64,000 bases of DNA from Ylistrum balloti (lineage: Eukaryota), in assembly GCF_031769215.1 (NCBI RefSeq), contig NW_026782094.1:806001-870000 (forward strand). The letters are read 5' to 3'. The position numbers and the translations under genes were made by a program. Numbering within the stretch: the stretch's first letter is position 1; each line of letters opens with the position of its first letter. Shown one piece after another: positions 8,201 to 59,830 of this stretch. The notes under the pieces are model-generated. The model did no database searches. It saw nothing but the letters and a program-made list of their open reading frames with translations, and was not told the DNA's origin.

Positions 8201-11200
8201 AACAGATGTCCTTTTCATTTCTATCATTTTACAGATTAATCCGTTTAATATTTATTTTTACCTTCTAGGATCTACCCAAAAAAGCATGAAATAGTTTCGA
8301 CATGGACTACTCTTTTTATAGATATCTATCCCAAATTATCACCGACATGCTCCTATTGCTTAATATGTTTACCTGGATGTAAAAGTTCGTCCTTCGGTAG
8401 AGGTGGCCGTTCGGGGCCTCTGGCACTGTCGGGGTCAAAATCATCTACAACAAAGACAAAATAAAGAATAACTCGCAACGAATTTGTCATCATTTAAATA
8501 ACTGATCAACACTCTATCATGAAAAGATGAATAAAAATAACGTTAGATTTATTATGTATTGTACATTTGCAATTATGTTTTCAATATACAATATCATAAC
8601 AGGTATTTATCACACGACACAACTTGATGATATTTTCATCATAATTGCGACAACTGCAAAAACGTTTGTACCAAAATTCAAACGTGTTTGTTCCACACTA
8701 TATTACTTCCTGTTAACTATAATGTCAGTTCCGTAAAGGTATACTTTTACTTGGTGAGAAGATCAGAATGCTGAAAAATGTCAAATTCTTAAGAAAATCA
8801 CCGAATGCTTTAAATGTGCAACATTTCTATATATGATCGAGTCATGCAAGCATTGCTCGTTTTAGTGTACTGCAGAAAAGAGAACGAACCATATATCCTG
8901 TCCAAAGATGTTTTGAAATGCTGTTTTAGACAGCGTCATCTTAAATGCTTGCAATAAGTCATATAACTGTTACAGACAGCCTTAATTTGTCATCACTATA
9001 AGAATGTGTATATTGATATTAAGTTTACTTACTCATACATACAAGTGTTGCAAATACGCCACATAAATTACTGTTAAACTATATCGTATATTTTTATGCT
9101 TGTTATTTTCATTTCAGTCTCTGATACGTTATCGGTACATTGGTACAATCTTGGTAGTGTCTCCATATTGCCTTGGAATTAAGGATTTTAGATCAGAATA
9201 ACTGTTTGGTATCTCATCTGAAATTAACACCTTTTGTCAAAGTCACAAATCTCAATTCTACATATCAGCACAAACCTTATGATATATAATATTTTATTAG
9301 TTTTTTTTTAAAGTAGACAAAATACACATTACAAAGATGTGGCCGGTTCCCCAAATATGTTGACATAGACACTTTATACACAACTCTTATCCGATAAAGA
9401 CAGTATATAGTATTGTCTGTCAAACAACAAACCCGTAAAGCATGATGATAAATATGTGTGAAATCATGAATCTGTAAGCACGAGAGATTAAATACATGTT
9501 CAATCACATTTTAAGTTACATCATGGCATAAACGTGCCTCTTTATTTACAGCATATTATTATGTGTTATGCCTGCTTCATAGCATAAATGTTCCCCTTTA
9601 TTTACAATATATTAAAATATGATAGAGCATACCTACGTCATAGCATGGATGTATTTTCAATTTACAGTATGGTAACATGTGTTGGAACACACCTGCTTAA
9701 ATATTGTTCAATCACTGACATGTTCATTTGTGTGTTAATATATCGTCTGGTCACATCTTTTAAACGTGTGGTAATTAATACCATTGAAATACATCTGATA
9801 TATCGTGTCATTGCTTTGACAACCCTGTCCCGTTATCATACTTACATGATAAACACTGCCTTGATTACTACCTAATGCATATGACAACGTTTCTGAACGA
9901 TCAATGGAAGGGAGGTAACTCAATATCATAGACAGCTCCATTCCTGTAGCTAAGTAGAAGCATTTCTGACTTATTTTAGAGAATGTTTCTGTCTGTCTGT
10001 CTGTCTGTCTGTCTAAATATGATATAAAAAAAAACTATCGAAACAAAATACCTGATGACATGCACAGCGAGTATCAAGAAAGACAAGCCCTGTCTATGAC
10101 AGTAAAATAAACTGAAACAGAACACAACGCTTACTAGTGTTTATGTTTGACCTGTGTGACATGGACACATGCTCCACACTTGATGTATCTGAAAAAAGAT
10201 CTTTGTCGTTTTAAAAACACAAACAAAGACAACTTGATCAAACAAGACTACTAGAAAATAGAATGAAGAAACTGGCTCTGTTATAAACACGAAATCTTCA
10301 GCACGACAGTTTATTATGATAGATTTTCTTTTCTCTCATCTCATGATTATCAAAACACTTTGGACCACATTTTTTATGATAATTACACATCAGCGCCGTG
10401 AAAATCTAAATAAGGTCATATTAAAATTCTTTATATTTCATATTGGAGAATTAATTATTAACAACCTGACGGTCGTCTGTGTCTCCTGCTGGCGGTAGGA
10501 GGTCCAGTGCGATGATTTTTTGTCGGGCCTCCTGCAAAAAAGAACACTTAAAAAGGATAGAGGCTATCATACAACGAAAGATATTTTCGTGTGTAAATGT
10601 TATTGATTTCACTCCAATCAATTGCATTACCTAAAGGGATTGATAGTAACTAGAGTTAGAACGTTAAAGATATGGTATATATCGGTTTTCTCCGCTTTTC
10701 AAAAAGTTCCAGATTTTTTTGTAGAACGAGTTCAATTTTAATCAATACAAAGGGACATTTCGTTCTCTCGACTATTGCTCTCAATACATTTACATGCGTA
10801 ATGCCTGTCTCTCAAGAAGGCTGCTGCACTCTGTAGCATTTTTAATAATCACTTAACTATCCACATGTCACTTAAATATACCACCTTTCCATTCATGAAC
10901 AGATTCATTCATTACTGGAAAAAAATAGTTATTAATTACTGGTGTAAATTTGGCTAAAACTACTCTGTAAGGTTTTGCTCATGTAAATATTATCTTTTTT
11001 TTTTGCAGGGATTCCATAATGTTATATTTAGCAGTATAATGCACTGATGTAGTTCAATGCGATTTGATAACGATTTAAGCTCACAAGTATTTCATGATAC
11101 CATTTTACAACGAGTCTAGATAAAGTACCATTTGATATGTTGCTAATAATTGTTATTTATAAACTACTGCAGGATATTTGAAGTGGATGAATCGGCTGAA

Positions 11201-12816
11201 AACGATATGGAAGATATCCTCCAGCGAAAATAACAGACTGAACAATACATTTATATGGATGTCATAGATGCAAGCAAGGTATTTTTGTAATTTCACGGCT
11301 TGATGAAAAGTAAGCAAATGAATGTTTATCTCATTCATGTATGAGTTATTTCCACGTACCTAATAACGGGACTAATCAAACTAACCTACTTTGCAGAATG
11401 AACCTACAGAGAAGTATTTTCCTTACCGTTTGATTTGGGGGCTGCCCCTTCCCAAACCGGCATCTTCTCATCAAAGGCCTTTAGATTCAACTCATAAGAG
11501 CCAACAGCCGGAAGTATCATTTCATATCTGCCTCTATCGCCTAGTGCAAGTCTGGCTTTTGAATGTATTTCGCCCTCTTTCGAAACAGTGACTTCTATCT
11601 CCAAATTTTCTTCCAGAAGTTTCCCTTCGAAGTTCTGGAACTCTATGACAATCTTACTTGGACTGCCATTAGTACCTGGTTCTGCGTAAACACGTGTTTT
11701 CGGTCGATAAAAGGCCGATGACTCAATGTTCCCTATGGTCTGGATAAATGTTTCAAAAGTTAGCTCGATATTTAGACCATTGAAGGAGAGATACGATGAT
11801 TCGTATGGTTCTTCATCTAGAGTGAGTGACTGGAGGTACGCAAATCGGCTGGAAATAATTGGGGCTATCTTCAGGAAGGCTGGCTGATTATTGTAGGTAA
11901 GACTTTGATGGAGAAATTCGCAGCAATTTTCGACTGACTTTACAATTATGTCAAGATTGTTTTCCTGGTGATCAAGCACTTCATTTTTCCTCGATGCTAC
12001 TGTTTGTATCTTGTTCAGTAGGTCATCCCGACGTCTTTTCAGAATCTGTATCATGGTTTCGAATGTCGTATTCAACTCGTCCACAGATTTTGTCCTATTA
12101 CGCTCAACCTCTTCTTTTGCCTCCTGTACCTTCTTCCTAATCATGTTACATTCTGAAATACGACTATGTAGCATTTGCGCGTCATTTTGAAGAGAAGCTT
12201 TCTTTCTACCATACACTTCCTGGATATCTTCTACAGCGTGTCTCTTATGGTGTATGAGGAAACAACGGGTACATATAGATTTATCACAGGTTGTACAGTA
12301 GTAGTGCATTGCCTCGCGTTCATGTCCCTGGGTTTCACAAAATGCCTGGTGCGAAAATTTACTGATATTTTCCTCTGAACTCTGTTCCTCGTCCAGAGAG
12401 AATACATAATGCGTTTTGAAGACAACAAGACGTCTGTGTGCTTCCTTACACGAGTCACACAAGAAATGATCACATGTTGTGCATCTGAATTTAGCTATGT
12501 CGTTGGAAGCACAGCCTTCGCAAACCAAATCGGGTCTATGAAGCGACGCACGAACAAAATCCTGAAGATCCTTTCTAGTATAATCAGTGGGAAATACGGT
12601 AAGGTTCTCATCGGGGACATGATAACTTTTCTGACACAATGAACACTTTACAGAATCGTCTTTGACGATGTTTTTTAAACAGGAATCACAATGTGTATGT
12701 AGACATGGCAAGACCCGTGGGAGTCGACTTTCCTGCGAAAATTCTTCAAGGCACACAGGACATTCCAAAAATCTCTCCTTTAGCTTCTGTACATACGTGT
12801 TATCCGTAGGCTCCAT
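5237..12816 (-). CDS. Tripartite motif (TRIM) E3 ubiquitin ligase: RING, B-box1, B-box2, coiled coil, filamin/Ig-like, linker, PRY/SPRY(B30.2)-like; about 819 aa
   Basis: Proposed CDS exons: 12816-11427, 10531-10466, 10188-10135, 9943-9872, 8444-8373, 7577-7515, 6063-5385, 5300-5237 (2460 nt). All introns are GT-AG with compatible phases. C3HC4 RING CPVC..CLHTHCDSC..CSLC; B-boxes CEGC..CTTC..CDSC..H..H and CETQGH..CTTC..CTRC..H..H. The large exons are well supported; the mini-exons and terminal exon less so. Confidence 0.85.
5385..6063 (-). CDS. PRY/SPRY (B30.2)-like domain exon of the TRIM gene
   Basis: Acceptor TTTTAAAG|GG at 6064/6063 (phase 1). PRY-like start FHLDETTMHKSQFLS; SPRY-like strands YFEVDI, FEIGFA, LGLNVD, IWPVFGVF. 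Donor CTCAG|GTAACT at 5385/5384. Confidence 0.75.
6128..7215. repeat. Diverged ~500-bp tandem repeat (two units plus a partial third) in a TRIM intron
   Basis: Shared anchors: GTGGGATAGG at 6248/6745, CAGAAAGGAAA at 6517/7024, TGTTACACGGG at 6619/7123 (period 497-507). Confidence 0.8.
9988..10014. repeat. (TCTG)n microsatellite
   Basis: About 7 perfect units read directly. Confidence 0.95.
11427..12816 (-). CDS. TRIM exon encoding the whole RING/B-box/B-box/coiled-coil/filamin-like module
   Basis: ORF 11404-12816. Phase-1 donor AAC G|GTAAGG at 11427/11426; acceptor TATTAG at 12836-12835 just upstream of the ATG. Confidence 0.92.
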
Positions 12817-13197
12817 GGTAATGGCTAGTGATTCCTAATATCAAAAGATAGGCAATTACATTAACCTGATCAGGAAAAATAATTGTTTTTTTTTTTATAA
12901 ATCTCAAGGAAAATTAAACATACTTATATAAAAGTTAGATATCATTATTCTAATTTTTCTGATACAAGTTTTCCATTTCGACAAATCGTGTAGTTATACA
13001 GACAAATATCCCTGGAAGTAACTCACAAATATGAGAAAATTGTTTCGTGCTCTATTATATTTAAACCGAATGCTTCTAATATAATCTGTACATTTAAATT
13101 CGTTTCCAATTGGGAATTTACTGGTAGGTAAAATATAGTAAATGTCTGGACAGCGAATTTAAGAAGGAATGATTAGCTTAAGTCCAAGGATGCTTAC

Positions 13198-13270
13198 TTA
13201 AAGGACACTTTTTATCTGTTTCTCCTCGAAGAAATCTTTTCCGCCTCTGACGTGATCCCGAAAAAAACCC
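13198..13270 (-). promoter_or_regulatory. Candidate non-coding first exon/promoter of the TRIM gene
   Basis: Minus-strand donor GTAAGC at 13197-13192; GC-box-like CCGCCT at 13241 and TGACGT near 13248. The coding exon has an acceptor 18 nt before its ATG, so an upstream exon is required. Confidence 0.3.
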
Positions 13271-14671
13271 CACAGAAATAAATAAGATGATATATCTATA
13301 CTCTGCAACCTCTTACACCTCCTTCTAAGTTTTAAGAAATGCGATGATTTCTACTCAGATGTTTCTATACAAATCATTATCCATCATCACAACATACTGA
13401 CCAGGAAGACCTCGAGTCAATGATGACAAGAAAATGTAAATAGTTAATGCGTCGGTATTGTAATTATAGCACTGGGAAGTTTTATTTTCGATTCGTTTTG
13501 TCTGAACAAACAGAAGATCATAGTTACAACTAAACAAAGGAGTCCACACAACACGTCATCGATAGAAATACATTGTAGTCCCATTCAAGTCATGACATAA
13601 TACGCGGTTTTTTAAAAACTTTGTTGTGTAAATTGTTGTGCCGATTATTGATATTAATATTTAATAATAATTTAGGGATGAAGTAATCATCAATTTGATA
13701 CAAAATAATCAAATTGAAAATCCGGCTCATTTCAGATGTGCCGACGCTCACTTTACTACTAAGGTTTTGTCAACGTTTCATAATTAGAGAGGTGAAATAG
13801 AACTGAGGAAGAGATCAGTCCCTTTAGAGTTTAAAGTGTTATTAAAATTTAAAATAAAAAAAAAATAATCCCCAATTATACCTGGTATAGATTTTTTGAA
13901 GAGAAATCCTCTGAAAAGATGAAAAGTCTAAGGTAGAAGCGACGTAAAAATTTGTTATCATCAATATTTTTACAGGAAACAATTTCCAACGCCAGTGTAG
14001 CTGTACTTCCACCTTGACTCTCTTACCAAAGTTGATATTTAGATATTAATACAATGCATTACATATAGAAATATAAACAGTAAAAACAAAGCCGTTAAAT
14101 AATAACTTGCCTTTTGAAATCCACTGATGGCTTGCTTTAATCCTTGTGTTTACTCACAGCCAAACTATTACCTAATATATATATTCCTTGTGTAGTTATC
14201 AGTCAGAGAAAAAAGCCTATATACCCATGTGTACAATACAATCAATGGCCAGTTATGTCAGGCCCTTTAAATAACACAACAAAGTTAAGAATTGGGCCAA
14301 ATTGGTCATGACAAGACATACGATAACATTGGTGTTCATTAGACCGTGTAACAACGTTGTTGTTTTGTTCCTGTACAAAATAAATATGACAAATCTTTGG
14401 TCTTAATCATAGGCGAGGTATTACGTAGTGCAAATATCAGGTTACAGTCTACAGTTTATGAAGTCATTGGGAGCTGTATATCTAATATGATACTGTTTAA
14501 TAATAACTTTATACTAAGATATATATATACATTACGTTACCCAGAAAGACGTTAAATGAAATATATTCGGAAAGTTAGTGACATGTAGCTATTTATATAT
14601 ACTGTATATTGATCATATTCGATTAGAAATTAAATCACTACCTATCAATATACATGGAGTAGACCATTAAC

Positions 14672-14681
14672 AAAAAAAAAA

Positions 14682-14712
<31 letters not shown>

Positions 14713-14720
14713 CAAAAACA
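14672..14720. repeat. Poly(A) followed by (AAAAC)n
   Basis: Read directly. Confidence 0.95.
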
Positions 14721-14837
14721 CTGTCTACACTGTTCTTTTGTTTTTCGCTATTTCATAATATCGATGATTTTGTTCTTGGCAATGATGACGATTTCATATT
14801 TTAATAATAGTATATACTAGAAGATTATTTCATATGT

Positions 14838-14955
14838 CGGGGTGTATGGATATTCCCCCCGAGAGGTCACAAAATGTCGTTAAACCCAAATCTAGGGCTT
14901 GATTTTTTTTAATAATTTGTGGCCCAGAAGATAAAGCATCCCATCCTTCACCCCG
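14838..14955. repeat. Imperfect ~118-bp palindrome, probably the terminal structure of a DNA transposon remnant
   Basis: Outer arms CGGGGTG/CACCCCG; inner arms GGTCACAAAAT/ATTTGTGGCC. Confidence 0.5.
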
Positions 14956-17239
14956 GTATATGAAAGAGGGTTTCCTTTCATTTCCCAATCTAAATTATTA
15001 GATTGAAATGGCTTCCGATGTCGACAATGCACTACAAAGGACGCCATATTACACAAAAATGATACTTCTTAATATGTAATTAATCGACAAATTGGCATAG
15101 AAAAAAATCTCCGTACCTAAATAAGACCAACCACATTTGCCCTAAAAATAAAGCAGTATACAGAGTATATGTGTGTGATACAAGAACAGCGAACCTGGTT
15201 GTATTACCCTGGACAGACCAGTATTACACGGGTAGAAATGAGAAAAAGTTTACTTTCTCCATATATGTATATGCATGTGAACTTGATATTACACTCTGAT
15301 CCTATATCTTTGATTGTCTTCAGTGAATTCGGCATCATTCAAATCATATTTATCTCCCTTTAATAACATTTGCGGTTAACTTACATAAACTACCACAGAC
15401 GTTTTATCAAATAATACACTACCCAATGAGCCATCAATTTTTTGCTAGGAAATTAGTTCTGCTAATGACATAGAAGCTTTTGAAAAAACTTCAAGTTTAC
15501 CAAAATGAGTTGAGTTCGGGTTGTATCCAATGTAGGTTTTATATATATACAAGTCTGTACGTACGTAGAGTTCTGCAAGATGACTCGTTATCGAAACAGC
15601 TTCTCTGAACAAGGGTTAGACTGGTAGAAGGCGTTTTTGTTTAGGTATCTAAGTTCTGTCGAAAAGTACAATAACATTGAAAGAACTTTAGATATCAAGT
15701 CCCTATAATGCAAACTTTTAAAACTTTTACAAAAGCTGAAATCCGATATTGATTCTGTATCTATAAACTGCATTTGTCTATGCAAAGAAAATAAGAACAA
15801 TGACATCACTTTTTAGCTTTGACAACATTACATCATCTTTAAAGATAAACCTCCCAACCATTCCTTAGAGAATGCCTCATTTTGAAGCTGATGAGCATTT
15901 GTCTTTCATATAATACAATTAATATACGATTATGATACACGTTTTGAGAGCAAAAGTCCTCAATAAAAATTTTGTCAAGAATTAATAATCTTTGAATAAA
16001 TTCTTGTTATTATTATAGTAAAAGGTCGGTAGATCTTAGGTGAGACAATCTGCATATTTCATGGACAATTTAGTTCATTCTGAATGTTACATTGGTTTGT
16101 TAGGTTTCCATGTATCTAATACATATATATAACAATTGAACTGGGTTGTAACTTCGTAAAACAAACAATGAATACATTTCTGCGTGCTTATTTGTCAAAT
16201 TTCAGCATTATGAATATTCTTACTCCGTACCGGTATAACATAATGACTGAACCAGAAATTTCTATGTGTGAGTTAAATTTCACATGCTGTAAACATACAA
16301 AAGTTATCAGGAAGAACGCTTGGCAGTCAACAGGCACTGGCTCTATATAAATATTGTTTTTTTTAGTCGGGACGTAAAACCGATTATCCGGGTTCCTGCA
16401 CTTAAATAATCGATTGGGGAGCATTTCCTTGGTAACTTGAGCTGCTTTTGAAGCCAAAAAACCAGTTGGACGAACTACAAGATTCTCCCTAGCTCTGCAT
16501 GTTTATTGAATATTATCGGGACACGAAACAAGCGATAGTACAAGACCACCGCAGGGATTCGGCCTTGAACTCGTGTTACCGGAACATCTTCTTACAACTC
16601 TCACGTTTAAAGAAACACATCCAGTAGGTTGTGGAGCAGCCTATGTAAAATGATTTGTATAATACTACTGTATTTCATGCAATTGCATCTATGGTGTTCC
16701 TTTAGTGTTTTTTTTTTTTACATTTCATTACATGACATTGTCTTTACATTTACATGTTTTCAATGCTATCAACTGAAAACATGATTCGATTAGACTGATT
16801 CATGTTTTCAAAGTACATTTTTTCTAAGTGATTTCATTTCAGTAATCTCACCCTTCGGCCAGTTCCTGGCAGAATATCCCATTGCACATTTATATAATGA
16901 AATTGACTAAATTATGAAATCAAGTATATTCGACAAAGAAGAACAAATCACCAGAATTGTTACAAGCTTGTTGAAACATTGAAATAACAGTCAGATCGGT
17001 TTTAAAAACACACTAAGATAGTCACTACAGATCTATTGCAGTGTAAAGCAACTATTTTTTAGATCCTTGCAATTGAACAACGATCAAAAGATATTCTTCA
17101 ATTTCTGGTATGAAAAAATAATATGTAAATTATCTCAATCAATCATTTGTGAGTGATCCGAAAAATGCTACTGTGAGAGCAGATGGAAATCTGATTTTCT
17201 GAAAATACAAGAGAAAAAAAATTTCAATTCAGATTTATA

Positions 17240-17900
17240 AAAGGAAATCGTAGAATATATAAACTATATTATATAGCTCGACTTCGTCAGTGATGCAGAT
17301 GCAAAACCGTAAAATAAATAGACGACCAAGGGAAATCCTAATGTCAAATATAGATATTAAATAGGTGAAAACAAAACCAAAACACCAAGAAAATACCAAC
17401 ATGTCAACACAATCATAAACCAAACTCAAATTTAATACATCCAGGGCAAAATATGAACAAAAGAAATATTTACACGGAGACTCCTCAAAAGGTGCATGCA
17501 TAATAGGTCCAGGTGTTCTGGAGTAGTAAGCGTCTTCTGCTTCATTGATGTCACCAGCCATGTAAATCCTGGATAATAGAAGAAAGTAATGTCACGTTCT
17601 CAAACGAGAACAAGGTATAAACACAGGAACAATAGGCTAACTAATGAGTATCAAACACGTCCAGCTTCATATCAAACAAAGACATTTATTATTTTTCAAC
17701 GCGATCACTATGACGAGTGTAAAACTTCTCTATAATTTTCATCAACCTGCATCTTTTGAAACCCCTAGTAACGAGTTTATCCACAGTAAGGTAAAAAGAT
17801 ACGAACACCTGTTCAGCTGGTCTGGGTGGCAACTGTTGATTGAATTCATATGTGCCTTTAAACTAACCCCTGCTGTGGTTAAGCGATAAAACGGGTGTTG
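17240..17900 (-). mobile_element. Penelope-like retroelement remnant (RT C-terminus and 3' region)
   Basis: Minus frame reads KLVTRGFKRCRLMKIIEKFYTRHSDRVEK. 3' motif GCAGAAGACGCTTAC..CCAGAACACCTG at ~17510-17540. CAACCTGCATCTTTTGAAA is shared with ~27650. Confidence 0.7.
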
Positions 17901-18111
17901 TACAGCTCCTCTTTACGCGTAAAACCTGAAGACCTGTTATACAAAGATAAATTACATTAGGAAAGCGGTGTGGAAACAGAACACAGGTAGGAAACATGTT
18001 TTAGTAACACTTCGTTATGACATTTACGTTGAGAGATTCATTAAGTCTAAAGGGAATATTGATGGAATTATCCGTTTATGATCATTTTTTCTCTATTTAG
18101 ACGGCCAAATA

Positions 18112-21100
18112 ATGATGCAACTTGTCATTCTACTGGTGTTCGGATTTACAGGTAAGATATCTATATTACTTGATCATGAAAATGGAAATACATTTACTCA
18201 TTGCAGATACGATATACTCACTGTGTGATATTGATCAGTTTCATGATATTGATGCCAGCCATTTTAAAACTCATCAATTTAATACCACCCTATATTCAGA
18301 TTCATTATTCGAGGAACTTCATCTCTCTGACTCAATTTTGATCACTTTCAAAGCAAACGTCAATCATGATATTACATACGATGGTTATGAAAACGTTAAG
18401 GACAACGTAACAGTATATTGTTTATGATCTCGATGTCAAATATCAAAGTTGTGGTAGTATTATACTAACATAATTAAATCGGTTCATTGTTATCAAATCT
18501 AAGTCTTTGTAGCGAATTTACAAAAGACAAGTGATTAATACCTTTTAACACGGGATTAGAATGAGAAACAAATGTAACATGTATTGAGGACATATATTCT
18601 GTTTTGCGTCATTTATATCATCAGATATCATGTCATTTATCTACGAATAACAAAACAATGAGAGACCATTATTTCTTGCAAATATAATTATTTCCTGTTT
18701 TATTGAAGGCTAGCTATATTTTCTGTACTAAACTAATCTAAACAGGGACAATTGGAGTTGCCCAGAGTGATCCTACCCAGATTACAATGTCTACAAAGGA
18801 CCTAATGGTGATGGAGAGTACTGATTTCACCATCAATTGCACCACAGGGGGTCTGGCCACCCAATTACTTAGTGATCCAATGGAGTTTATATACACTGAA
18901 CAAAGTTCGGCCGACGTGGTACCAGGCGCTCGCGTCGTCATACTTTCCGCAAACAACAACCTAAAACCCAGCATTGATAGTGCTAAGTATGAGGTCTCGT
19001 TCTCCGCCCAAACTGACTTTAATTTCTTCCTCGTCGTCAAAGGTATGTTTGAAATATTACTACTACTAACTAGCATTGCAATATGACGTTAGACGGAAGT
19101 TCACAATGTATACCTGATGTTTGGTAGTAACCTTGTTCTCATTTGGGAACCGTACATTACTAACTTGACAATTTACATGGTGGGTGAGCAAACGACGCTT
19201 GCCGTTCGGATGATCTTGGTTAATTCTACATTTTTCCGGGGTCGCTATGTGAATGTTTCATTTTATATTTGTTCATATTTTGTTTTTTTTTCCTTTGTCT
19301 CATGTTGACTGATATTTCGAACAGTATCATCAATGTATATTTGCTAGGTTGATCGCCCCTAGAATAGCAGGGTCAATTTGTAGCGGTGTGTCATTGTAGA
19401 ATTGAGATGCAGCCTGACTGTTCCACATGTAGGAGGTCCAGTCTGCATTATATGTATGTGTCACAGAGCAAACGGATTAATGTCTTGCTAAAGGGCACAA
19501 CCACAACTCTTATATACCAGTAATCAAAATTTCCTGTGATACACAAATTGTCCTAAAAAGGGATCCAGCCACACATCCCGTTATCCTTTGAGGTTGTAAC
19601 GTCCGTATCTATAACATTAGTTAATACTGAATAAGAATTATAACTCTGAAAATCAGTTTGAAGGACATCAAGATTATCATAGCGATTTCTGAGAATATCT
19701 GTGTGATAGTAATGTGACATATTTTGTTTGTAGTTGCCGAATTAAAAGACACAGGTGTGTACACCTGTGCACGCGGAAACAGGAATGTCTCCACGTTTGT
19801 AGAAGTTCGTTCTAAACAAGGTAAAATACTATGTTTATATTGTAAACATATAAATAATACATGCATTAGGTGATTTACGTATTGTGATGTTTAGTCTTTG
19901 TGAATAGTCTCAATGTTATCGCAGCAGACATGTCATTTAATTGTGTATACATGTATATTGACTTTATGTCTCTGTTCCCATATCATACAAGATTTGTAAT
20001 ACATCGTTACACATAATGTGATTTCATTTTGTGGAAACATTCTTTGATTCATTGACTTTAGTATATAGTTAACGCGATGTGCAATACACCTAATCCGCTT
20101 GTAGTCTCGTGTAAAAGTTAAATGCTATACTCTTTCATCTTGTTTTGTTGGCAATCAATCATTTTTCAAATCCAAACCTCTTGTCTTGACATAGATTAAT
20201 CAACTTTTAAATATTACAAATGTTGTGTCTCAGATATTATCTGCACATGCCCAGACGGATACATCCGATTTGGCAATGCATGTTTCCGGTTTTATCATCA
20301 GCATATGTCGTGGCCAGAAGCATCGGTATGTTTACAAATACAGAGTCTCGTTTTTCTTTCAAACATCTTACCATCTTGAAATAAATCTCATGGTATAAAC
20401 TCATACTACGACGGGTAATCATATTAGTATCTTACAGAATCGTGATAATCGTGACTTACTATATGAATAAATTAATCAAATATTTTGAATGACAATAATT
20501 ATGATAATACAAAATTTGTGTCAAAACCACCACGATCGATATATTCATGTGACCACCGTCCTAAAACTGTTGTGTAACATGTACACATTTTTTGGCTTTT
20601 TTGTAACAGTATATGTGTGAAGCATTTGGTTCTCATCTGGCATACATTGAGTCGAATGCAGAGTATGAGTTCCTGAGAGCCTTCGTAACTGAGACAGAAG
20701 GTATGATACCATAAGCTTCTTGGCGATTTTGAGTAGATATAATCTTCTTCAATAAATTGTCATTAATACAGCAAAAGTGTAATGCTTAATAAAGCGGATC
20801 TTGTTGGAAAGAGGACAGGTAGATTATGTCGTTATTGGTATAAAAAACAGTCCTGAGAGTTAGAGAAAACGATATGTTTATGTAGTTGAGTATTGTTATA
20901 GATAATGCTACGGTTTAGTAACGGTCTCGTCAGAGAATCATCGAGGAAACGAAACAAAAAAAACCAATACCATTCTCCTTTAGAACAGAAGTTCTATTAA
21001 CACAGCTAGTAAGACAATTATGTCGATGGTATATATATACACTTTCACCTGCATTAAACGAATGACCAGTGTTAAGTGCTTATCTGCACTGATGTGTACA

Positions 21101-21532
21101 GTTTAGGAGACTGCAATGAATAGCCATAATATAGTCGCCATTTTGTTTCGCCATTTTCTATCTTAGTTTACTTATAATCATGTTACAGACGTAAATTTGT
21201 GAAGATTTAAATGTTTCACATTTCATCAAAAAGACATGTGCCGCGTGAATATCTGAGGTGGTTAAATCCAGGACGACCTGTACATATTAATTTTACTGAT
21301 AGGTGGTTACAATGGCGAGGGTTTCTGGCTGGGGGCAACCTCAGTTCGACTTCCGGGTCACTGGCACTGGAAATATGATTCCTCCTTGGTCGACTTTGAT
21401 GAAATGACACCATTAGATTCCAACCCTCCAAACCACGATTGCCTATTCTTGTCTGGCCAGCATGAGTTTGCTGCAAAGGGATCACTCTGCAACACTGACC
21501 AAAACTTTATATGCAAAACAAAGGTGAGTTAG
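18112..21532 (+). CDS. Secreted protein: signal peptide, degenerate Ig-like domain and C-type lectin domain (CREP/VIgL-like), about 249 aa
   Basis: Exons 18112-18151 (MMQLVILLVFGFT, phase 1), 18746-19042 (phase 1-1), 20234-20325 (DIICTCPDGYIRFGNACFRFYHQHMSWPEAS), 20610-20700 (YMCEAFGSHLAYIESNAEYEFLRAFVTETE) and 21303-21523 (FWLGAT..GHWHW..DCLFL..C..NFICKTK), all GT-AG and in frame. The last exon either splices at 21524 or reads to TAG at 21530-21532. The CTLD is strongly supported; joining it to the Ig exon is inferred from phase. Confidence 0.75.
19120..19320 (+). mobile_element. Penelope-like 3' end fragment in the lectin gene intron
   Basis: GTAACCTTGTTCTCATTT is shared with ~40586; it is followed by a GAGCAAACGACGCTTGCC motif like the other copies. 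Confidence 0.5.
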
Positions 21533-24500
21533 ATTCCTTGTAAAGTGCGAGGTATATCTTTGCAATGAATGAACATTAAAACAACGTGTCATCCTTGCAA
21601 CCTCTTGTAAGAATAAACAATAGATATTATTATACCATGTACTGACTTGCTCTGACGACTTCAGTCTTTCCTTTCAAGAAGAAAGGAAACAACATACGAC
21701 CCGATGTCATTTTGACAATTACACTAATTTTATTTAATCTTCTCGGATATCTCCAAAAACTGAACAAATTAGAAAGGTAAACCTTAAATGCACGCTTATT
21801 AAAAAGTCATTTTTAGAAAACACGGTCAGATTACAACAATGTTTGTGTATATTCATATTTGTTTATAAACCTGTCCAACATGCCTCTCACAACAAAATAT
21901 CAAAGTTATTTACGTTTCCATATAGAGTTGTATTATTAGATTTCAGTGTGTGACCATGATGGAAATTGAAACTTTTTAAAACAAAAATAGTTGAAACATC
22001 AATTATTTGATTATGATATCGCATTAACACGCACGAATTGAGATCAGTTAGAGAAACTACTGCCAGGCCTTGATATCAATATCATTTAACACTGATTAAA
22101 CGTCGACATATTGGAATATTTTCTCAACATTCATTTACCACCCAAACATAAACCCACTGGCTCGACATCAGTTATCTGAATATGATGTGCCATAACATTT
22201 AATCGATATGGACGTTCCGTTATTGTTTCAACAAAGTGCGTTTTAGAATTAAAAGAACAGATTTACCCACTTATCATACTAAATCTTCCAAATGTTTCTG
22301 CCTTGACATTTGTACTACTGATATACCTAAGATACCTTACTTTTCATTATTAAGATTCAATATCTTCCGATCTCTTCTCACCATAGGCATATTATAAATG
22401 ATCTATGATTCCCGACATTTCCTACACTACCTATATTACTCGAGAGTTCAAGATGACACGTACAATAATCAGACGTTAATGTCCCTTTCATGATCCATGT
22501 TATTTTTCAAAGATCCTTTCCGAAACAAATGGTCTTATATTCCTTGTGGGTTTTCAATGATATCCACGTAATTCATTTTTGTTCCTCTTTTGTCCTCGTA
22601 TTATTGATTTTTTAGTTCAGATCTCTCGTTTGTTAATTTATTGGTATCCTCTTGTTGTTTTTTTTTCAAAAATATCTCAAATTCTTTCACCTCGTCATCT
22701 TGTTTAATGTTACGTTCTACTTCTGTGGGATTGATCCAAACACTATCACAAAAACCTGATGTATCCCTTCTTAATGCAACCCAAGCTTAATATTTGCCAC
22801 AAGTTGCCTCAGCATCATTTTTATTTTACGCTTCATTTAGATAACAATAAACCTTTTGTGGGAGGGTTAATACTTTCCTTCAGAAAGTCACTGTCTTCTC
22901 TTTTAGTTTTGCTAATGTTTTATCAGTTTTGAATCTAAATGTGGTATTATCACAGCTGTTGTTGCCTTACATGTTTGTGTCTCCTTGTTTCATTTAGATA
23001 CATTATATTATATATCACAATCGGTATTCAGAGCACGTTTGTAACATGAGGGCATAGGGTTTAATTTAGTTATGTCACTTTATTTAAGGACTTTATATCA
23101 GACGGTGTTCATCCGAGATTTTCTGTATATGGATATGAACCATGTCAGTGAATATATACCTATACAGGGTACTTTATATCTCTTATATTTCATGACAGCA
23201 CGAATAATGCCTGTTTAGGCTGCAGGTTTAAGAATGTTCAGTGATATTCCGCATTTTTCTTCTTAATCATGCTTATATCTATTTCCTTCAAGTGCTATAT
23301 GGCTATTTTTTGTTTAGAAAATCTGCTTGAGATTATATCTGGTTCGTACTGCCATATTGTAAATATCTATATTTTTACAGGTATCCAAGTGTGTTTGAGA
23401 CAATGCAAATACAAGCGATTTACAGGAGAAAAAAGGTCTGGACAAAAAGACGTAAGACAAAATGTGTTTAAAAACAGGAAGGAAGGGAGGCAGAGGGATC
23501 CTTATCGTCACATATGACAATGCTAACAATGGACACGATTTGAGCATTACAATTAGTCTACGTCGTTATCTTTCAAAATGTACATTGCGTTTTACATACA
23601 TATGTTGTACATATATCAAATTAGTCTGGCGGCTGATTGTTTTCAATTAAAAGAACAAACGCAAATTAAGTTATTTTTTGTCATGTTTGCCCATATTTTG
23701 AGCTGATTTCTCATCGGTAGGTTTTTGGGAACATTTTGGAGACTGATGATATTTTAAAGGAAAAGTTTTGAGAAACCGTTTATTCTACGTTAGATTTACC
23801 TCTTGATCTCACTAGATTTCCTGTCATTTAAATAGTCACTATGTTATACTTGCACTTAACTGGAATTGTTTTGTTTCCGAATTGCATTTTACTTTTCCCG
23901 CAAATAATGTCAAACTTTTGACATATTCGAAAGATGTTTTACCTGTAATGCCATGCAGGAGAGTTGGTGAATTCATTTATGTAATAAAATCCTTTAAGCA
24001 CATTTTATGTTAATATCAATCCATACAAATATTAGCACACGAAAGAATGGATCAATATATAGGACAGTGAATTAATTTGAATACTACAGACCATGACCCT
24101 GACGTTAACATTTTTGTTATTTATATACTCAATATCCTAAAGTTAGAAACAGGTATTAATGTCATCGAGTCAGTATATGATTTTCTATAGTTTATGCTTA
24201 TAAAGTTTTCTTAAATGATCTAACTATGCATTTCTTCACTTTTGTCAAATATAATCTTTATAGAAGAAACTGATGTTAATAAAGAACGATTATTAATTAG
24301 ACATATTTTGAAATAATACATCACAAATTCATTATTAAAACAAATCACTTTTCATATATGTAGTAGAAACTGAAATGTATAAATGCTGGTATTGATTTAT
24401 GTTTCATAATGATATCATCATATGAAATATAATGTTATTAAAACTAATATTGTTTGTACTAACTCAAATAATAACAAATGTATAACAGTGGAAGCTGTTA

Positions 24501-27419
24501 ATGCATCATTGTAAAACATTTAAAAATCATGAAAATAAATATTTCTAGTTGACAGTTGATCAATTAACCATTCTATTTCTGTTGTTGCTGTGCTATATAC
24601 CAGTTTATAATAGGATGTATGAAGTTGATCATTTCTGTACACTTTAAAACCCCCATATGGTGCCCCTGGCTTGATCATTATTACAACCCATTCAGTTGTA
24701 CACACGAATCCACTGAAGCAGGCAGTTCGACAATCAATGGCTGAGAAGTAACACATGTGTGCTGTGTTACAAACTACTGTGGTATATGTGCAGATGGGGT
24801 ATGTCTTGCAACCGGATATAGTAGGTATACTCTTTACTGTTTTTCTTTTTTTTTGTATTGATGTGTATATTGCATATGATAAGATTACTAGCATGTGTAT
24901 TTAAAGACGCCATTTTTGTCTGTGTATTGCAGAAGCCACGTGTTTAACATGTTTTTGGTGAGTATCCTGCCACACATATACAATATTTGTCGTCCGTTAG
25001 GTCGTTAGTTTTATGTCAGATTCCTTTCCATAGGTTTCTCTTTTTATATTATAGTGGAGTGTATACATAACGAACAATCACCTCTGACTGACAGCTAATA
25101 CACATACACTACAGCATTCAGCTAATATTAAAGTTCTCATGTACTGCACGGCATTGGGTCTTTACTGAACGTTATATTGATCAGATCCTTTATATACCTT
25201 GGACTTTGGACTCCTAATCATACATAAATCACTTTTCTGGCTACATTGTACGAAAAGTAATTTCAGTTCATATATCCCTGACAATATTTACATATACATA
25301 TACATATAAAACAAGATGACGGTTACAGAAATCGACATTATAATTCTTTGATCTGATTTCCCTCTTCCTCAAAACTCAAATTAGTTAAAGAAACTTATTT
25401 TTACTGACATTAAAATAACTTCAGTTAGATATTTTATTTCACCACGACATGGTATACACAGTAAAAGATGGCAGGTATTTTAATGGCCATGCTATGGGTC
25501 ATTGGTGTTACAAAGGTGACAGGCTGTACTTTACATCTTCTTTGTCTTCCTGTGTTATTTTTAACCTGATTATACCGGCTTATAACATAATCTTCGCATG
25601 GAAGAAGCTACGTTGATTACAGTATGTTATGAAAAAGTGTATTGCATGTCTTTCTGATAGAAATCATACTATGAAAATCTCTTACAACATATATGCTCTA
25701 ATTACACTAAAAGTGTTCAGTGTTATCACTTACTAGAGAAAAACATACCACGCTTGTCTGTGAGGTACAAACGACAAATGTTGAATATTACTACTCTGAG
25801 AAAACCAACTGTTTTGCTGAACACCTATTTAGCTAGTGTCAGTGTTAGACGGCACAGTCAGACTCGCTCAATGACATTTAGGACAAGTAGGTTATAAAAA
25901 TAAAACGTTTATAAACTAGACGTGTACAGGTTGAAATTGACTTCTGCTTGGCGTAGGTATGTCCTGATACTTATATATTTTAATGATACTTTATCAATAT
26001 CGCTATTGTCTTAGCCGTTAAAGATCACACATGATTATTTAGATACCCAGCTAAATTATACTATTCGAAATACGTTATCAAAAACAAAGCACATTATATA
26101 AGTGATTTTTCAGGAACTATTTATATCTATTTTATATAATTCTTTCAATATATTTCAACGAATTTACATCTTTGAAATGTTGAAACTAAATTGCAGATAG
26201 CTACAATCGACAAAGCTATATGATACATTAAAAAGGATGTTTCAAATATTAATAATCCGTTAGAGATAAACGTGGACATCGCACTTTGTTCTATATTTTG
26301 TCATCATATGCCAGGGTTACATAATCAAATACCGTAGCTGTGAAACTAAATCGAGGTATGGAGGCGTCCAGCAGCACCAATATTGCTAACGGAAATTATT
26401 TTTGGCTCGAAAAAATGAAAAAAAAACAACGTTTTCGCCGCATAAAAGAATGTACAGTTGTTCGGTATTTTATGCCATCCCATTAAATACTTATCAAACA
26501 CATTCTACATTATAAATTAATGATGAATTTCAACAGAACACATCGTACATTACGGCTTGTAGGTAAAGTATGAGGTATTGCTTGGCATGTCAATATCGAC
26601 TTCTTGTGTGTCTAAAGAAAGAAACATGAATAACTAATTTGGTAAATCTCGTATAAAATATGTTATAATATTAGACTATAACTTTTCAATTCTTGTAAAA
26701 CTTTATTATATTTCACAAAATAATCCTTTATACCGTTGATGGCTTATACGATTCTTGCCAAATTCAATTTGCACAGGTTTGTTATCCCTATAGAATTCTA
26801 TGGGGAGAAACTGAGCTGTATATGTACATTCGAAATGTCCTTCCTCCTGCCTTGATCTTACCAATGAGTTCCTTAACCATTAGTTCAGTTAGTAATGATG
26901 GTTTAATAATTCTTAAAAAATTAAAGATTAAATATCAGACACATGAGTGATAGCACTTTAAACAATTATAGAATAAGGTTTATCACATTTTATAAGAACG
27001 TATTACCACTATATAAATTAAACTGCACCATACAGGTGTTTGTTTTTTCTAAAACTCGTTAGTGATGATAACGGCCTATGTTGTGAATCCTAGGAAGCGA
27101 CTGAGGGAGTCCATAGAATCTTACTTCAATTCATTTTTTTTATGAACTTACTTCAAGTCAAATTAATATTATATTCACTCGTGAATGTTTTTTAATGTCA
27201 TTACTATTATGTGTCTTTTGTACAACCTTCCGAAAGTTAGTAAGACTGGCCACTGAAACATTTCAAAGAAGTGACGAAGTTTGATTGAATGGAACCAAAA
27301 ACAAGAAAACACAAACATATCAGCGTAATCATAGCTGATCTCAAATACAATCAAACCAGGGCAAAAATGTGCGTAAAAGGAAGATTAACACGATTTACAC
27401 TCCTGACTCCTGAAGTAAG

Positions 27420-28180
27420 TTCAAGGAGAATAGGATCAGGTATTCCGGAAAAGTAGGCGTTTTTGCTTGACACCCGAAATGTAAATATTTGTCAATCCGA
27501 ACAAGTTCTCAAATGAGAACAATGTATATTACAAAGGAACTATCAGGCAAGCTGGCGAGCACCAAAGGCGTTGTCTACCTTCATATTACACAAAGAAATA
27601 AAATATTTCTCATTAAGAACACCGTAAAACCTCCCAATAATATCCCTCAACCTGCATCTTTTGAAATGTTTGTCCATAAAATGGCGACTTCTTGCACTAA
27701 AATTGTGATAATGGGAACAGGTCCTTGAATTACATCAATTGCGACATGTAAAAATCATAGCTTGAAGATCCGGGGATATTGCTATTCAGAAAAGGACAAT
27801 TCAAAACAGAAGTATGAAAACAAAACATGTCAGCCAAAAGAGGGGCACAGTTACTTCCCGAAGGTATTTCAATAACCTGTTGGAAGATCATGCCACCAAA
27901 CTCGACGATGCTGATATCCAAATACTCGATCATTTGTAAGAATTCATACAAAGATTAATTGTTATCTGATATGGCCATATGTGTCACGAAATACGCTCCA
28001 GTATAGTTGACATATATAAGGTAGTTCAGCCGTTCACCTTTCTTAAAGAAAAGAAACCCAATCATAACTCCAGAATGAAGGCGTTCGTTTAGTGTCGCAT
28101 GTTGGAGGTTGAAAAAAAAGTTCTTGGAGTCAGTAAGCTATGGAGTATTTCATATCTATGTTATATTTAAGCGTGTGTAC
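27420..28180 (-). mobile_element. Penelope-like retroelement RT remnant with internal deletion
   Basis: Minus frames read FFKKGERLNYLI..YFVTH..MIEYL, FGGMIFQQVIEIPSGSNCAPLLADMF and NCPFLNSNIPGSSSYDFYMSQL. These match the PLE RT motifs QQxxGIPMGxNCAPLLADLF and NFPFLxSNIP...YISQL. Confidence 0.85.
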
Positions 28181-28556
28181 TCACTAACCATACTTTACCT
28201 TCCTACGTTGTTTTACAGCATACTATTTAGGACCTTTACCGCTTCTATTATGTAACATAGCTGAATGGAACATATTCATTCTATTTCTGAGTTATCATAG
28301 CATAGACCAGGTTCCTTTTAACAACACACGTGTTGTAATCATACAATGTATATATCTGTGAATTGTCTTTGATGTTAAAACTTTAGATATCTAATTACAC
28401 TAAAATGCATAGTCAACTGTGAGCAATGCAAAAAATAAGTAGATATTCACGTGATTGCTACACCGTCTTTAACTGTCATTACAATCTTGATTATGACATT
28501 TCTGATAATTTTGGGTTCTCCTCAGTCGCCCCCTAGACTTCAAACTTTAGGAGTGT

Positions 28557-28598
28557 ATCATCATTAACGAGTCATCAAGGGACGAAACAGTGTATGAT
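28557..28598 (+). ncRNA. Degenerate minimal hammerhead-ribozyme relic
   Basis: ATCA-TTAACGA-GTC-ATCAAGG-GAC-GAAAC-AGT-GTA-TGAT is colinear with the near-intact copy at 56230-56273, with two core substitutions. Confidence 0.5.
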
Positions 28599-28968
28599 TG
28601 AGTTTGAATCGATGTTTGATTACAGTGCATTGAGCTCTGAATTTGTTTTACATTGTATTATCTATTTGTGTGTAAGTTGTACAACCATGAGATATGAGTA
28701 AGTACTTACATTTACTTTTTTGGGTATTTCGAGCTGACTGCTCACATGTCTGATAATGAGTTGCCTCGTCAAATGCAGATTCAAATGCACGATAAAAACT
28801 GCCGTTGAGTAGAAGAAGGTATATACATAGCGAGATATAGAGAGTGAAAAAACACTTGTTCTTTATTAACAGATTCACTGAAGTAAAGATTGCTCACATT
28901 ATTTCATTCAGATTTCGATGGAAGTCTCAGTGAAATAGCGGTAACAGCTTGACAGCAAGGAATAACTG

Positions 28969-59637: not shown

Positions 59638-59830
59638 NNNNNNNNNNNNNNNNNNNNNNNNNNNNNNNNNNNNNNNNNNNNNNNNNNNNNNNNNNNNNNN
59701 NNNNNNNNNNNNNNNNNNNNNNNNNNNNNNNNNNNNNNNNNNNNNNNNNNNNNNNNNNNNNNNNNNNNNNNNNNNNNNNNNNNNNNNNNNNNNNNNNNNN
59801 NNNNNNNNNNNNNNNNNNNNNNNNNNNNNN
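59638..59830. other. Assembly gap (193 N)
   Basis: Run of N. Confidence 1.

What the first reader, a model, noticed from the sequence alone, without database searches (positions are those of the whole stretch)
18112..21532. Hidden five-exon gene: secreted Ig-domain plus C-type lectin protein (CREP/VIgL-like)
Seen: signal peptide MMQLVILLVFGFTGTIGVAQS; a 297-nt phase 1-1 exon with Ig hallmarks (VMESTDFTINC B strand, DSAKYEV tyrosine corner with the second Cys replaced by Val, FFLVVKG G strand); then a complete six-Cys CTLD over three exons. Known: IgSF plus lectin proteins (FREPs, CREPs, GREPs) are candidate diversified immune receptors in gastropods such as Biomphalaria. Inference: a CREP-like recognition molecule whose Ig domain lacks the canonical disulfide and carries a free Cys, possibly for dimerisation.
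Basis: partly seen in the sequence, partly recalled or inferred. Interest (0 to 1): 0.75.

Follow-up and report, generated by a model that had tools for sequence, protein, structure and literature searches.

The report
Scallop secreted Ig plus C-type-lectin gene
This is a real, already annotated but unstudied scallop gene for a secreted protein with one antibody-like (Ig) domain and one C-type lectin domain.

Summary
The gene is real. Every exon is 100% identical to RefSeq XP_060068787.1, "uncharacterized protein LOC132548904" of the scallop Ylistrum balloti, so it is neither hidden nor from a gastropod.

The five-exon model is wrong in two places:
- It skips an 87-nt phase 1-1 exon (19734-19820). 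This exon carries the canonical Ig F strand motif (D-T-G-V-Y-T-C) and the G strand.
- It reads into an intron. The last CTLD exon ends at 21523, and a mini-exon (23381-23398) adds V-S-K-C-V and the stop.

With both exons the Ig domain has its normal Cys pair, so there is no free Ig cysteine.

Three other scallop genomes have one orthologue each, with identical exon structure and conserved neighbours. Eight intron-less transcript contigs from Argopecten irradians confirm every junction in that orthologue.

There is no paralogue in the genome, and dN/dS is about 0.1. This does not look like a diversified family.

The Ig-plus-CTLD layout resembles snail CREPs and crayfish PcLec3, but I found no sequence kinship to them. 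The CTLD lacks a conserved EPN/WND sugar site. The function is inferred: a soluble bridging or recognition protein. It is an ordinary new member of a known kind.

The parts
17827..17986 (+). Conserved promoter and 5' non-coding exon. It ends at 17986 (donor GT 17987-17988). Its 5' end is unknown.
   Evidence: 74% identity over 168 nt to the 5' exon region of Pecten maximus, and a match to that of Argopecten irradians. In the four-species alignment the in-frame ATG of P. maximus and A. irradians is GTG here and ACG in M. yessoensis. Read directly, an in-frame TAA lies at 17920-17922 with no ATG before 18112.
17710..17785 (+). Alternative 5' exon used by the RefSeq model. It adds 29 residues in front of the signal peptide and is probably not part of the real protein.
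   Evidence: It encodes the first 25 residues of P0007. It lies inside a dispersed ~160-bp repeat with at least 2656 candidate copies in this genome, where contig depth is about 53,000. The extension is absent from all three orthologues.
18101..18151 (+). Exon with the start codon (ATG 18112) and most of the signal peptide. It ends in phase 1.
   Evidence: This is the only hydrophobic segment of the protein (Kyte-Doolittle 19-residue mean 2.0; nothing above 0.96 after residue 25). The orthologues from A. irradians (isoform X2) and M. yessoensis start at this Met.
18746..19042 (+). Ig exon 1 (297 nt, phase 1-1): end of the signal peptide, then Ig strands A to E with the B-strand Cys and an N-C-T sequon.
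   Evidence: 100% identical to P0007 residues 44-141. No Pfam hit when scanned alone. Strand assignment.
19734..19820 (+).
   Evidence: AG/GT borders. Matches Pfam V-set positions 81-98. 100% identical to P0007 residues 143-170. The same 87-nt exon is present in P. maximus and M. yessoensis and in A. irradians transcripts. pN is 0.10-0.14 against pS of 0.42-0.54.
20234..20325 (+). CTLD exon a: an extra Cys (C-T-C) and the long-form N-terminal Cys pair.
20610..20700 (+). CTLD exon b: helix region with Cys-1.
   Evidence: Pfam Lectin_C positions 11-36, E 0.004 when scanned alone..
21303..21523 (+). CTLD exon c: the W-L-G motif and Cys-2, Cys-3 and Cys-4. It ends at 21523 in phase 0, not at 21532.
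   Evidence: Pfam Lectin_C positions 39-107. P0007 continues after K-T-K with residues encoded at 23381. The same border is found in two other genomes.
23381..23398 (+). Terminal coding mini-exon (V-S-K-C-V plus TGA), followed by a 3' UTR of unknown length.
   Evidence: Found behind a pyrimidine-rich acceptor. The equivalent exon is present in P. maximus and M. yessoensis and in A. irradians transcripts. The C-terminal Cys is invariant.

Best explanation
What is shown: the region holds an eight-exon gene (seven coding exons) of the scallop Ylistrum balloti, LOC132548904. Its product is a secreted, acidic protein of about 260 residues once the signal peptide is removed. It has no membrane anchor. 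It consists of one V-like Ig domain with the normal B-F disulfide pair and two conserved N-glycosylation sequons. A linker of about five residues joins this to one long-form C-type lectin-like domain. That domain's closest sequence relatives with solved structures are the CTLDs of the mannose-receptor family (PLA2R, DEC-205, Endo180). The gene is single copy, kept in the same gene neighbourhood in scallops, and under purifying selection in both domains.

What is inferred: it acts as a soluble two-headed bridging or recognition protein. The CTLD would hold a ligand through a non-canonical site, because the first residue of the EPN-equivalent triplet varies and no WND is present. The Ig domain would make a protein contact, for instance with a cell surface, as shown experimentally for the crayfish Ig-CTLD lectin PcLec3. 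Two further invariant cysteines lie just before and just after the CTLD. They either staple its two ends together or link two chains.
For: Gene model:
- All exons are 100% identical to P0007.
- The seven-coding-exon structure is identical in P. maximus and M. yessoensis.
- Eight ~1.2-kb contigs from eight A. irradians runs carry the uninterrupted 290-aa ORF. One of them maps to the genome in eight blocks.
- Of the five exonic SNPs in another individual, four are synonymous.

Domains:
- Lectin_C scores 50.9 bits against a cutoff of 22.6, and V-set is hit in 4 of 4 orthologues, best E 3e-5.
- The PDB profile search finds mannose-receptor-family CTLDs, E down to 1e-25.
- For the Ig part, ESM Atlas structural matches are all Ig proteins, TM 0.70-0.77. 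All top-50 Foldseek hits are Ig V domains. PDB profile hits align the E-F strands with antibody VH.

Secretion: there is a single N-terminal hydrophobic segment.

Conservation:
- Only four proteins, one per scallop species, are found.
- Synteny holds: a RING/B-box (TRIM-type) gene upstream and an MFS gene downstream.
- dN/dS is 0.07-0.12.
- There is no near paralogue.

Functional analogy: PcLec3 (PMC4944128).
Against: - There is no RNA evidence from Y. balloti itself. The only run found was DNA, and no transcript is on record.
- The Ig call is below Pfam's curated cutoff (22.3 against 26 bits), and the domain has no core Trp.
- My own AlphaFold models were poor: pLDDT 33 for the full length and 54 for the Ig part.
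- The function rests on analogy only. Tissue, ligand and oligomeric state are unknown.
- A single-copy, slowly evolving gene without a canonical sugar site fits a non-immune role as well as an immune one.
Confidence: 0.55

Rival explanations
1. One reading: a five-exon gene whose Ig domain has lost the canonical disulfide and carries a free Cys for dimerisation. It would be a CREP-like member of a diversified gastropod-type immune receptor family.
For: The 87-nt exon is phase 1-1, so skipping it would stay in frame. The Ig-plus-CTLD layout does match CREPs (PMC5433772).
Against: - The exon is in the RefSeq protein of this gene and in all orthologues.
- It is under purifying selection.
- It is present in 8 of 8 A. 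irradians transcript contigs.
- The gene is single copy with low dN/dS.
- The organism is a scallop.
Confidence: 0.03
2. Same protein, but with a non-immune role. It could be an extracellular-matrix, adhesion or biomineralisation protein. In that case the CTLD would bind a matrix component or mineral surface and the Ig domain would dock it to another protein. This would resemble vertebrate link proteins (V-set Ig plus Link modules) or mineral-associated CTLD proteins.
For: - The gene is single copy, syntenic and under strong purifying selection.
- No canonical EPN/WND site is conserved.
- The predicted pI is acidic, 4.87.
- Whole-protein language-model neighbours include HAPLN link proteins, at scores of 0.78-0.83, which count as leads only.
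- The PDB CTLD hits include lithostathine, ovocleidin-17 and struthiocalcin.
Against: Those PDB hits are no better than dozens of other CTLDs. The Atlas scores are below the level at which they mean much. There are no expression or proteomic data, and no paper names the gene.
Confidence: 0.3
3. The RefSeq protein is right as written. Translation starts at 17710 in the upstream exon, so the hydrophobic segment is internal and acts as a signal anchor or a late signal peptide.
For: The RefSeq model XP_060068787.1 has this 29-residue extension.
Against: - That exon lies in a dispersed repeat with thousands of copies.
- The extension has no counterpart in three orthologues.
- A different 5' exon, conserved across four species, lies at about 17900-17986 and has no ATG in this species.
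Confidence: 0.1

Closest known systems
[quoted passage not shown]
   Same: A secreted protein with N-terminal IgSF domain(s) followed by a C-terminal C-type lectin domain. The Ig domain is too divergent for routine domain callers (PMC9334734; PMC5433772).
   Different: - There is no detectable sequence similarity of the Ig part to anything outside scallops.
- It is single copy rather than a multigene family, with dN/dS of about 0.1.
- There is no interceding or internal-repeat region, only a linker of about five residues.
- It is from a bivalve, not a gastropod.
- No binding or expression data exist.
PcLec3 of the crayfish Procambarus clarkii (an IG plus CTLD lectin of 252 aa)
   Same: The same size class and the same two-domain layout. 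It is secreted. In PcLec3 the Ig part binds haemocytes, both domains bind microbes and sugars, and only the full-length protein promotes phagocytosis (PMC4944128).
   Different: It is from an arthropod and no homology was tested or shown. The layout probably arose independently. For the scallop protein the function is only an analogy.
CTLDs of the vertebrate mannose-receptor family (PLA2R, DEC-205, Endo180, MRC1)
   Same: These are the best sequence matches of the CTLD among solved structures, E 1e-25 to 1e-9 for whole multi-CTLD chains and 1.8e-9 for the best single domain. This explains the NCBI name 'secretory phospholipase A2 receptor-like' given to the A. irradians orthologue. Most of those CTLDs also lack a sugar site.
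   Different: Those are large membrane receptors with 8-10 CTLDs, a ricin-type domain and an FnII domain, and no Ig domain. The scallop protein has one CTLD and is soluble.
Link proteins (HAPLN) and the lectican G1 region
   Same: A V-set Ig domain directly followed by CTLD-superfamily modules in a secreted protein. They appear among the language-model neighbours.
   Different: Link modules are a shortened CTLD variant and occur as a pair. The scores were only 0.78-0.83. No hyaluronan-binding features were examined.

Membership tests
C-type lectin-like domain (Pfam PF00059 Lectin_C) | Profile match above the curated cutoff | tested here: met
   50.9 bits against a cutoff of 22.6, covering model positions 2-107 of 107. 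Hit in 4 of 4 orthologues.
C-type lectin-like domain (Pfam PF00059 Lectin_C) | Four core cysteines plus the N-terminal long-form pair, and the W-I/L-G-L type motif | tested here: met
   Cys147-158, 175, 249, 265 and 273 (numbering from Met 18112) and F-W-L-G-A are invariant in four species. The pairing itself is inferred from the standard CTLD pattern.
Ca2+-dependent sugar-binding C-type lectins (canonical CRD) | EPN or QPD triplet together with WND at Ca2+ site 2 | tested here: not met
   The triplet that the PDB profile alignment places opposite E-P of PLA2R CTLD1 reads PPN here, and SPN, EPN and EAN in the orthologues. The residues before Cys-3 read K-G-S-L, with no W-N-D in any species. 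The positional assignment is partly my inference.
Immunoglobulin superfamily, V-set (Pfam PF07686) | Profile match above the curated cutoff | tested here: not met
   22.3 bits (E 1.6e-4) against a cutoff of 26, spanning model positions 6-96 of 109. Hit in 4 of 4 orthologues, best E 3.1e-5. Exon 18746-19042 alone gives no hit.
Immunoglobulin superfamily, V-set (Pfam PF07686) | B-strand Cys and F-strand Cys within D-x-G-x-Y-x-C | tested here: met
   Cys45 (I-N-C) and Cys124 (D-T-G-V-Y-T-C), 79 residues apart, are invariant in four species.
Immunoglobulin superfamily, V-set (Pfam PF07686) | Conserved core Trp in strand C | tested here: not met
   There is no Trp anywhere in the Ig part of any of the four proteins. 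A Phe in M-E-F probably takes its place (inference).
Immunoglobulin superfamily, V-set (Pfam PF07686) | Beta-sandwich fold | tested here: inconclusive
   In the ESM Atlas model of this protein (pLDDT 0.69), residues 51-172 align to Ig proteins at TM 0.70-0.77. My own AlphaFold model has eight strands but a pLDDT of only 54. All top-50 Foldseek hits are Ig V domains, but at E of 5e-3 or weaker and TM 0.46-0.57.
VIgL / CREP family of gastropods | Signal peptide, IgSF domain(s), C-terminal C-type lectin domain | tested here: met
VIgL / CREP family of gastropods | Sequence relationship of the IgSF part to gastropod FREP/CREP IgSF domains | tested here: not met
   HMMER of the 98-aa Ig exon against 1.84 billion representatives found only the scallop cluster plus three low-complexity chance hits. 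Single-protein and profile word searches found the same four scallop proteins. Very remote kinship cannot be excluded.
VIgL / CREP family of gastropods | Multigene family with sequence diversification | tested here: not met
   There is no paralogue of the Ig exon in the 648-Mb genome. The nearest CTLD paralogues are 26-30% identical. dN/dS is 0.07-0.12.
VIgL / CREP family of gastropods | Plasma protein that binds pathogens | not testable with these tools
   No expression or binding data exist, and no paper mentions the gene ids.

The most novel reading that the evidence does not exclude
Scallops independently assembled a CREP-type molecule: a V-like Ig domain without the core Trp, fused to a CTLD without a canonical sugar site. 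They then kept it as a single, slowly evolving gene. This would be the first VIgL-like lectin described in bivalves. Its two extra invariant cysteines (before the CTLD and at the C-terminus) would make disulfide-linked dimers that bridge a target to haemocytes.
Probability: 0.15. Interest if true: 0.45.

Novelty: new member of a known kind. Interest (0 to 1): 0.22.

Why it matters
Ig-plus-lectin proteins are discussed as diversified immune recognition molecules mainly in snails. A conserved single-copy counterpart confined to scallops shows that the layout also occurs in bivalves, apparently without diversification. It gives aquaculture immunology a defined candidate to test.

There are two practical points:
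- Standard domain annotation lists only the lectin domain for these proteins, so the Ig domain goes unannotated.
- The RefSeq N-terminus of the Y. balloti protein appears to come from a repeat copy.

Tried and rejected
- RNA evidence from this species. The run search returned one run only, and it was DNA contigs of another individual. Exact look-ups of the 310-aa and 281-aa products found no transcript contig.
- AlphaFold on the full-length four-sequence alignment gave pLDDT 33 and was unusable. The Ig-only run gave pLDDT 54 and I used it only as weak support.
- Three of the four hits of the big HMMER search (P0002-P0004) are long, low-complexity or unrelated proteins, and I discarded them.
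- I considered that the gene continues into a transmembrane exon after the 21523 donor. It does not: the only further coding exon adds five residues, and no hydrophobic segment exists.
- I first took AATAAA at 21612 as the polyA signal of a gene ending at 21532. I dropped this once the terminal exon was found.
- Rfam found nothing in 12800-29000.
- There are no paralogues in the window.
- Earlier scan notes by words gave nothing.
- Joined step left out. Exons were searched one by one by reference. Full-length work used the stored database protein P0007, which matches every exon at 100%. The substitution counts were made exon by exon and only then summed.
Full report
**What is in the sequence.** All borders are AG/GT.
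- The start is ATG 18112, followed by a hydrophobic leader that ends in phase 1 at 18151.
- A 297-nt phase 1-1 exon lies at 18746-19042.
- Three exons at 20234-20325, 20610-20700 and from 21303 together encode a six-Cys C-type lectin-like domain.

It lies at 19734-19820 (87 nt, phase 1-1), behind a t-rich acceptor and before a GTAAAA donor. It encodes the textbook Ig F-strand motif D-T-G-V-Y-T-C and then a G strand.

Scanned exon by exon against Pfam:
- the 297-nt exon alone hits nothing;
- the 87-nt exon hits V-set positions 81-98;
- the last two CTLD exons hit Lectin_C positions 11-36 and 39-107, which is colinear with the model.

**Identity of the gene.** I ran HMMER with the 98-residue Ig exon against 1.84 billion representative proteins. 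It found one true relative, P0001 of Pecten maximus. Three other hits were unrelated low-complexity proteins.

A word search with P0001 and a profile search with the alignment each returned the same four proteins, all from scallops:
- P. maximus LOC117342770;
- Argopecten irradians 'secretory phospholipase A2 receptor-like';
- Mizuhopecten yessoensis LOC110460003;
- Ylistrum balloti LOC132548904 (P0007, XP_060068787.1).

Every window exon, including the 87-nt one, is 100% identical to P0007. So the window is Y. balloti, a scallop and not a gastropod. The gene is already annotated, though only as 'uncharacterized', and only Lectin_C is recorded among its precomputed domains.

**Corrected gene model.** After K-T-K it continues V-S-K-C-V.
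- The last CTLD exon stops at 21523 (donor GTGAGT).
- A mini-exon at 23381-23398, behind the acceptor t-t-t-t-t-a-c-a-g, supplies five codons and TGA.
By coincidence the read-through also begins V-S.

The same seven coding exons, with the same phases, occur in the P. maximus locus L002 and the M. yessoensis locus L003. This includes the 87-nt exon and the terminal mini-exon.

The best splicing evidence comes from A. irradians. Eight contigs of about 1.2 kb, from eight different sequencing runs, each carry the uninterrupted 290-aa ORF. One of them maps onto the 5.6-kb genomic gene in eight blocks. These are assembled transcripts. They contain every junction of the corrected model and none that skips the 87-nt exon.

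For Y. balloti itself no RNA was available. The only run found is DNA of another individual. Its five exonic differences are four synonymous third-position changes and one Ala to Val.

**The start codon.** RefSeq puts 29 extra residues in front of the signal peptide. They are taken from an exon at 17710-17785.
- That stretch is a copy of a dispersed ~160-bp repeat with at least 2656 candidate copies in the genome. Contig depth there is about 53,000.
- The extension is absent from the orthologues.
- A different 5' exon, ending at 17986, is conserved in all four species.
- In P. maximus and A. irradians that conserved exon carries an in-frame ATG ten codons upstream of the signal-peptide Met. 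In Y. balloti the same position is GTG, and in M. yessoensis it is ACG.
- An in-frame TAA lies at 17920-17922, with no ATG before 18112.

**The protein** (numbering from Met 18112).
- The only hydrophobic segment is the N-terminal leader. Nothing after residue 25 comes near membrane-span values. The product is therefore soluble and secreted: about 260 residues, predicted pI 4.9.
- Ten cysteines are invariant in the four species:
  - 45 and 124 are the Ig B and F strand pair;
  - 147-158, 175-273 and 249-265 are the standard long-form CTLD pattern (pairing inferred);
  - 145 and 280 lie just before and just after the CTLD.
- CTLD termini lie side by side. So Cys145 and Cys280 could staple the domain shut or form interchain bonds. 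This is inference.
- Two N-x-S/T sequons (N44, N130) are conserved, both in the Ig domain.

**Is the N-terminal part an Ig domain?** With the missed exon included, the evidence is as follows.
- Pfam V-set is hit in 4 of 4 orthologues. The best E is 3e-5. For this protein E is 1.6e-4 at 22.3 bits, below the curated 26, spanning model positions 6-96.
- A profile of the Ig part finds only Ig V domains in the PDB, weakly (E from 0.013). The E and F strands align with antibody VH.
- The ESM Atlas holds a model of this exact protein (pLDDT 0.69). Its residues 51-172 superpose on Ig proteins at TM 0.70-0.77. The language-model neighbours are V-set clusters at 0.90-0.91.
- My own AlphaFold run on the four-sequence alignment was poor (pLDDT 54). 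It still gave eight strands in the expected A-B-C-C'-D-E-F-G order. All top-50 Foldseek hits were Ig V domains at weak scores.

The domain has no core Trp, which probably explains the low profile score. I conclude it is a divergent V-like Ig domain with a normal disulfide pair.

The segment read as a Cys-less tyrosine corner is the D strand. The segment read as the G strand is the E strand.

**The CTLD.**
- Lectin_C scores 50.9 bits.
- The closest solved relatives are CTLDs of PLA2R, the IgY receptor, DEC-205, Endo180 and MRC1. This accounts for the NCBI name of the A. irradians orthologue.
- The triplet aligned with E-P of PLA2R CTLD1 reads PPN here, and SPN, EPN and EAN in the other scallops.
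- No W-N-D precedes Cys-3 in any of them.

Canonical Ca2+-dependent sugar binding is therefore not conserved. The domain should be called a CTLD, not a proven lectin.

**Evolution.**
- The Ig exon has no second copy in the 648-Mb genome or in the window.
- The nearest relatives of the CTLD exon are 26-30% identical.
- Gene order is conserved. A RING/B-box (TRIM-type) gene lies upstream on the minus strand in the window and in P. maximus. An MFS transporter gene lies downstream in the window and in M. yessoensis.
- Nei-Gojobori counts were made exon by exon and then summed. They give dN/dS of 0.07-0.12 for both domains in all three species pairs. Synonymous sites are near saturation, so the ratio is approximate, but pN is far below pS in every exon, the 87-nt one included.

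This is the signature of a conserved single-copy gene, not of a diversifying receptor family.

**Comparison with known systems.** The layout (signal peptide, Ig, CTLD) is that of snail CREPs within the VIgL family (PMC5433772; PMC9334734) and of the crayfish lectin PcLec3. In PcLec3 the Ig domain binds haemocytes, and only the full-length protein promotes phagocytosis (PMC4944128).

Membership in the CREP family is not supported:
- no sequence link of the Ig part to anything outside scallops;
- no gene family;
- no interceding region.

The resemblance is one of architecture and is probably convergent. Whole-protein language-model neighbours also include vertebrate link proteins (V-set plus Link modules), but at scores that are only leads.

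**Function.** My preferred mechanism is a soluble two-headed bridging or recognition protein. It may be dimerised or stapled through Cys145 and Cys280, with the CTLD using a non-canonical site. This is inferred by analogy.

A non-immune matrix or adhesion role fits the conservation pattern, the acidic pI and the missing sugar site about as well. I give it roughly 0.3. No paper mentions any of the gene ids.

**Rule-bound omission.** Exons were searched by reference one at a time. Full-length analyses used the stored protein P0007, or its part 30-310, which is identical to the exons.

**Verdict.** The feature that made it interesting, a disulfide-less Ig with a free Cys, is an artefact of the missed exon. 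What remains is an annotated, uncharacterised, scallop-specific Ig-CTLD protein: a new member of a known kind, of modest interest.

Noticed in passing
window 17620-17785: A copy of a dispersed ~160-bp repeat (80-86% identical copies, at least 2656 first-look candidates genome-wide, SINE- or MITE-like). RefSeq uses part of it (17710-17785) as a coding 5' exon of LOC132548904, which gives a doubtful 29-residue N-terminal extension.
   Followed up: partly
window 19000-19200 (intron after the 297-nt Ig exon): Contig depth rises to about 236 here. Joints link about 17648-17764 to about 19128-19130, one of them on opposite strands. This suggests a partial, possibly inverted, copy of the same repeat inside the intron.
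   Followed up: no
window 17960-17990, with L002, L003 and L004: The conserved 5' exon carries an in-frame upstream ATG in P. maximus and A. irradians, adding 10 residues with Lys/Arg before the hydrophobic core. The same position is GTG in Y. balloti and ACG in M. yessoensis, so the length of the signal-peptide n-region differs between scallops.
   Followed up: yes
window 5237-12816, minus strand: A TRIM-type gene (RING, B-box, coiled coil) with its first exon ORF at 11404-12816. A RING/B-box gene sits in the same position and orientation next to the P. maximus orthologue.
   Followed up: partly
window 28969-32169, plus strand: An MFS / monocarboxylate-transporter-like gene starts downstream. 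An MFS_1 gene lies in the same position in M. yessoensis.
   Followed up: partly
window 21471: The other individual (run X1) carries C>T, changing Ala to Val in the CTLD loop between Cys-2 and Cys-3. This is the only non-synonymous change among the five exonic differences.
   Followed up: yes
window 59638-59830: A run of 193 N (assembly gap or masked). I left it untouched.
   Followed up: no
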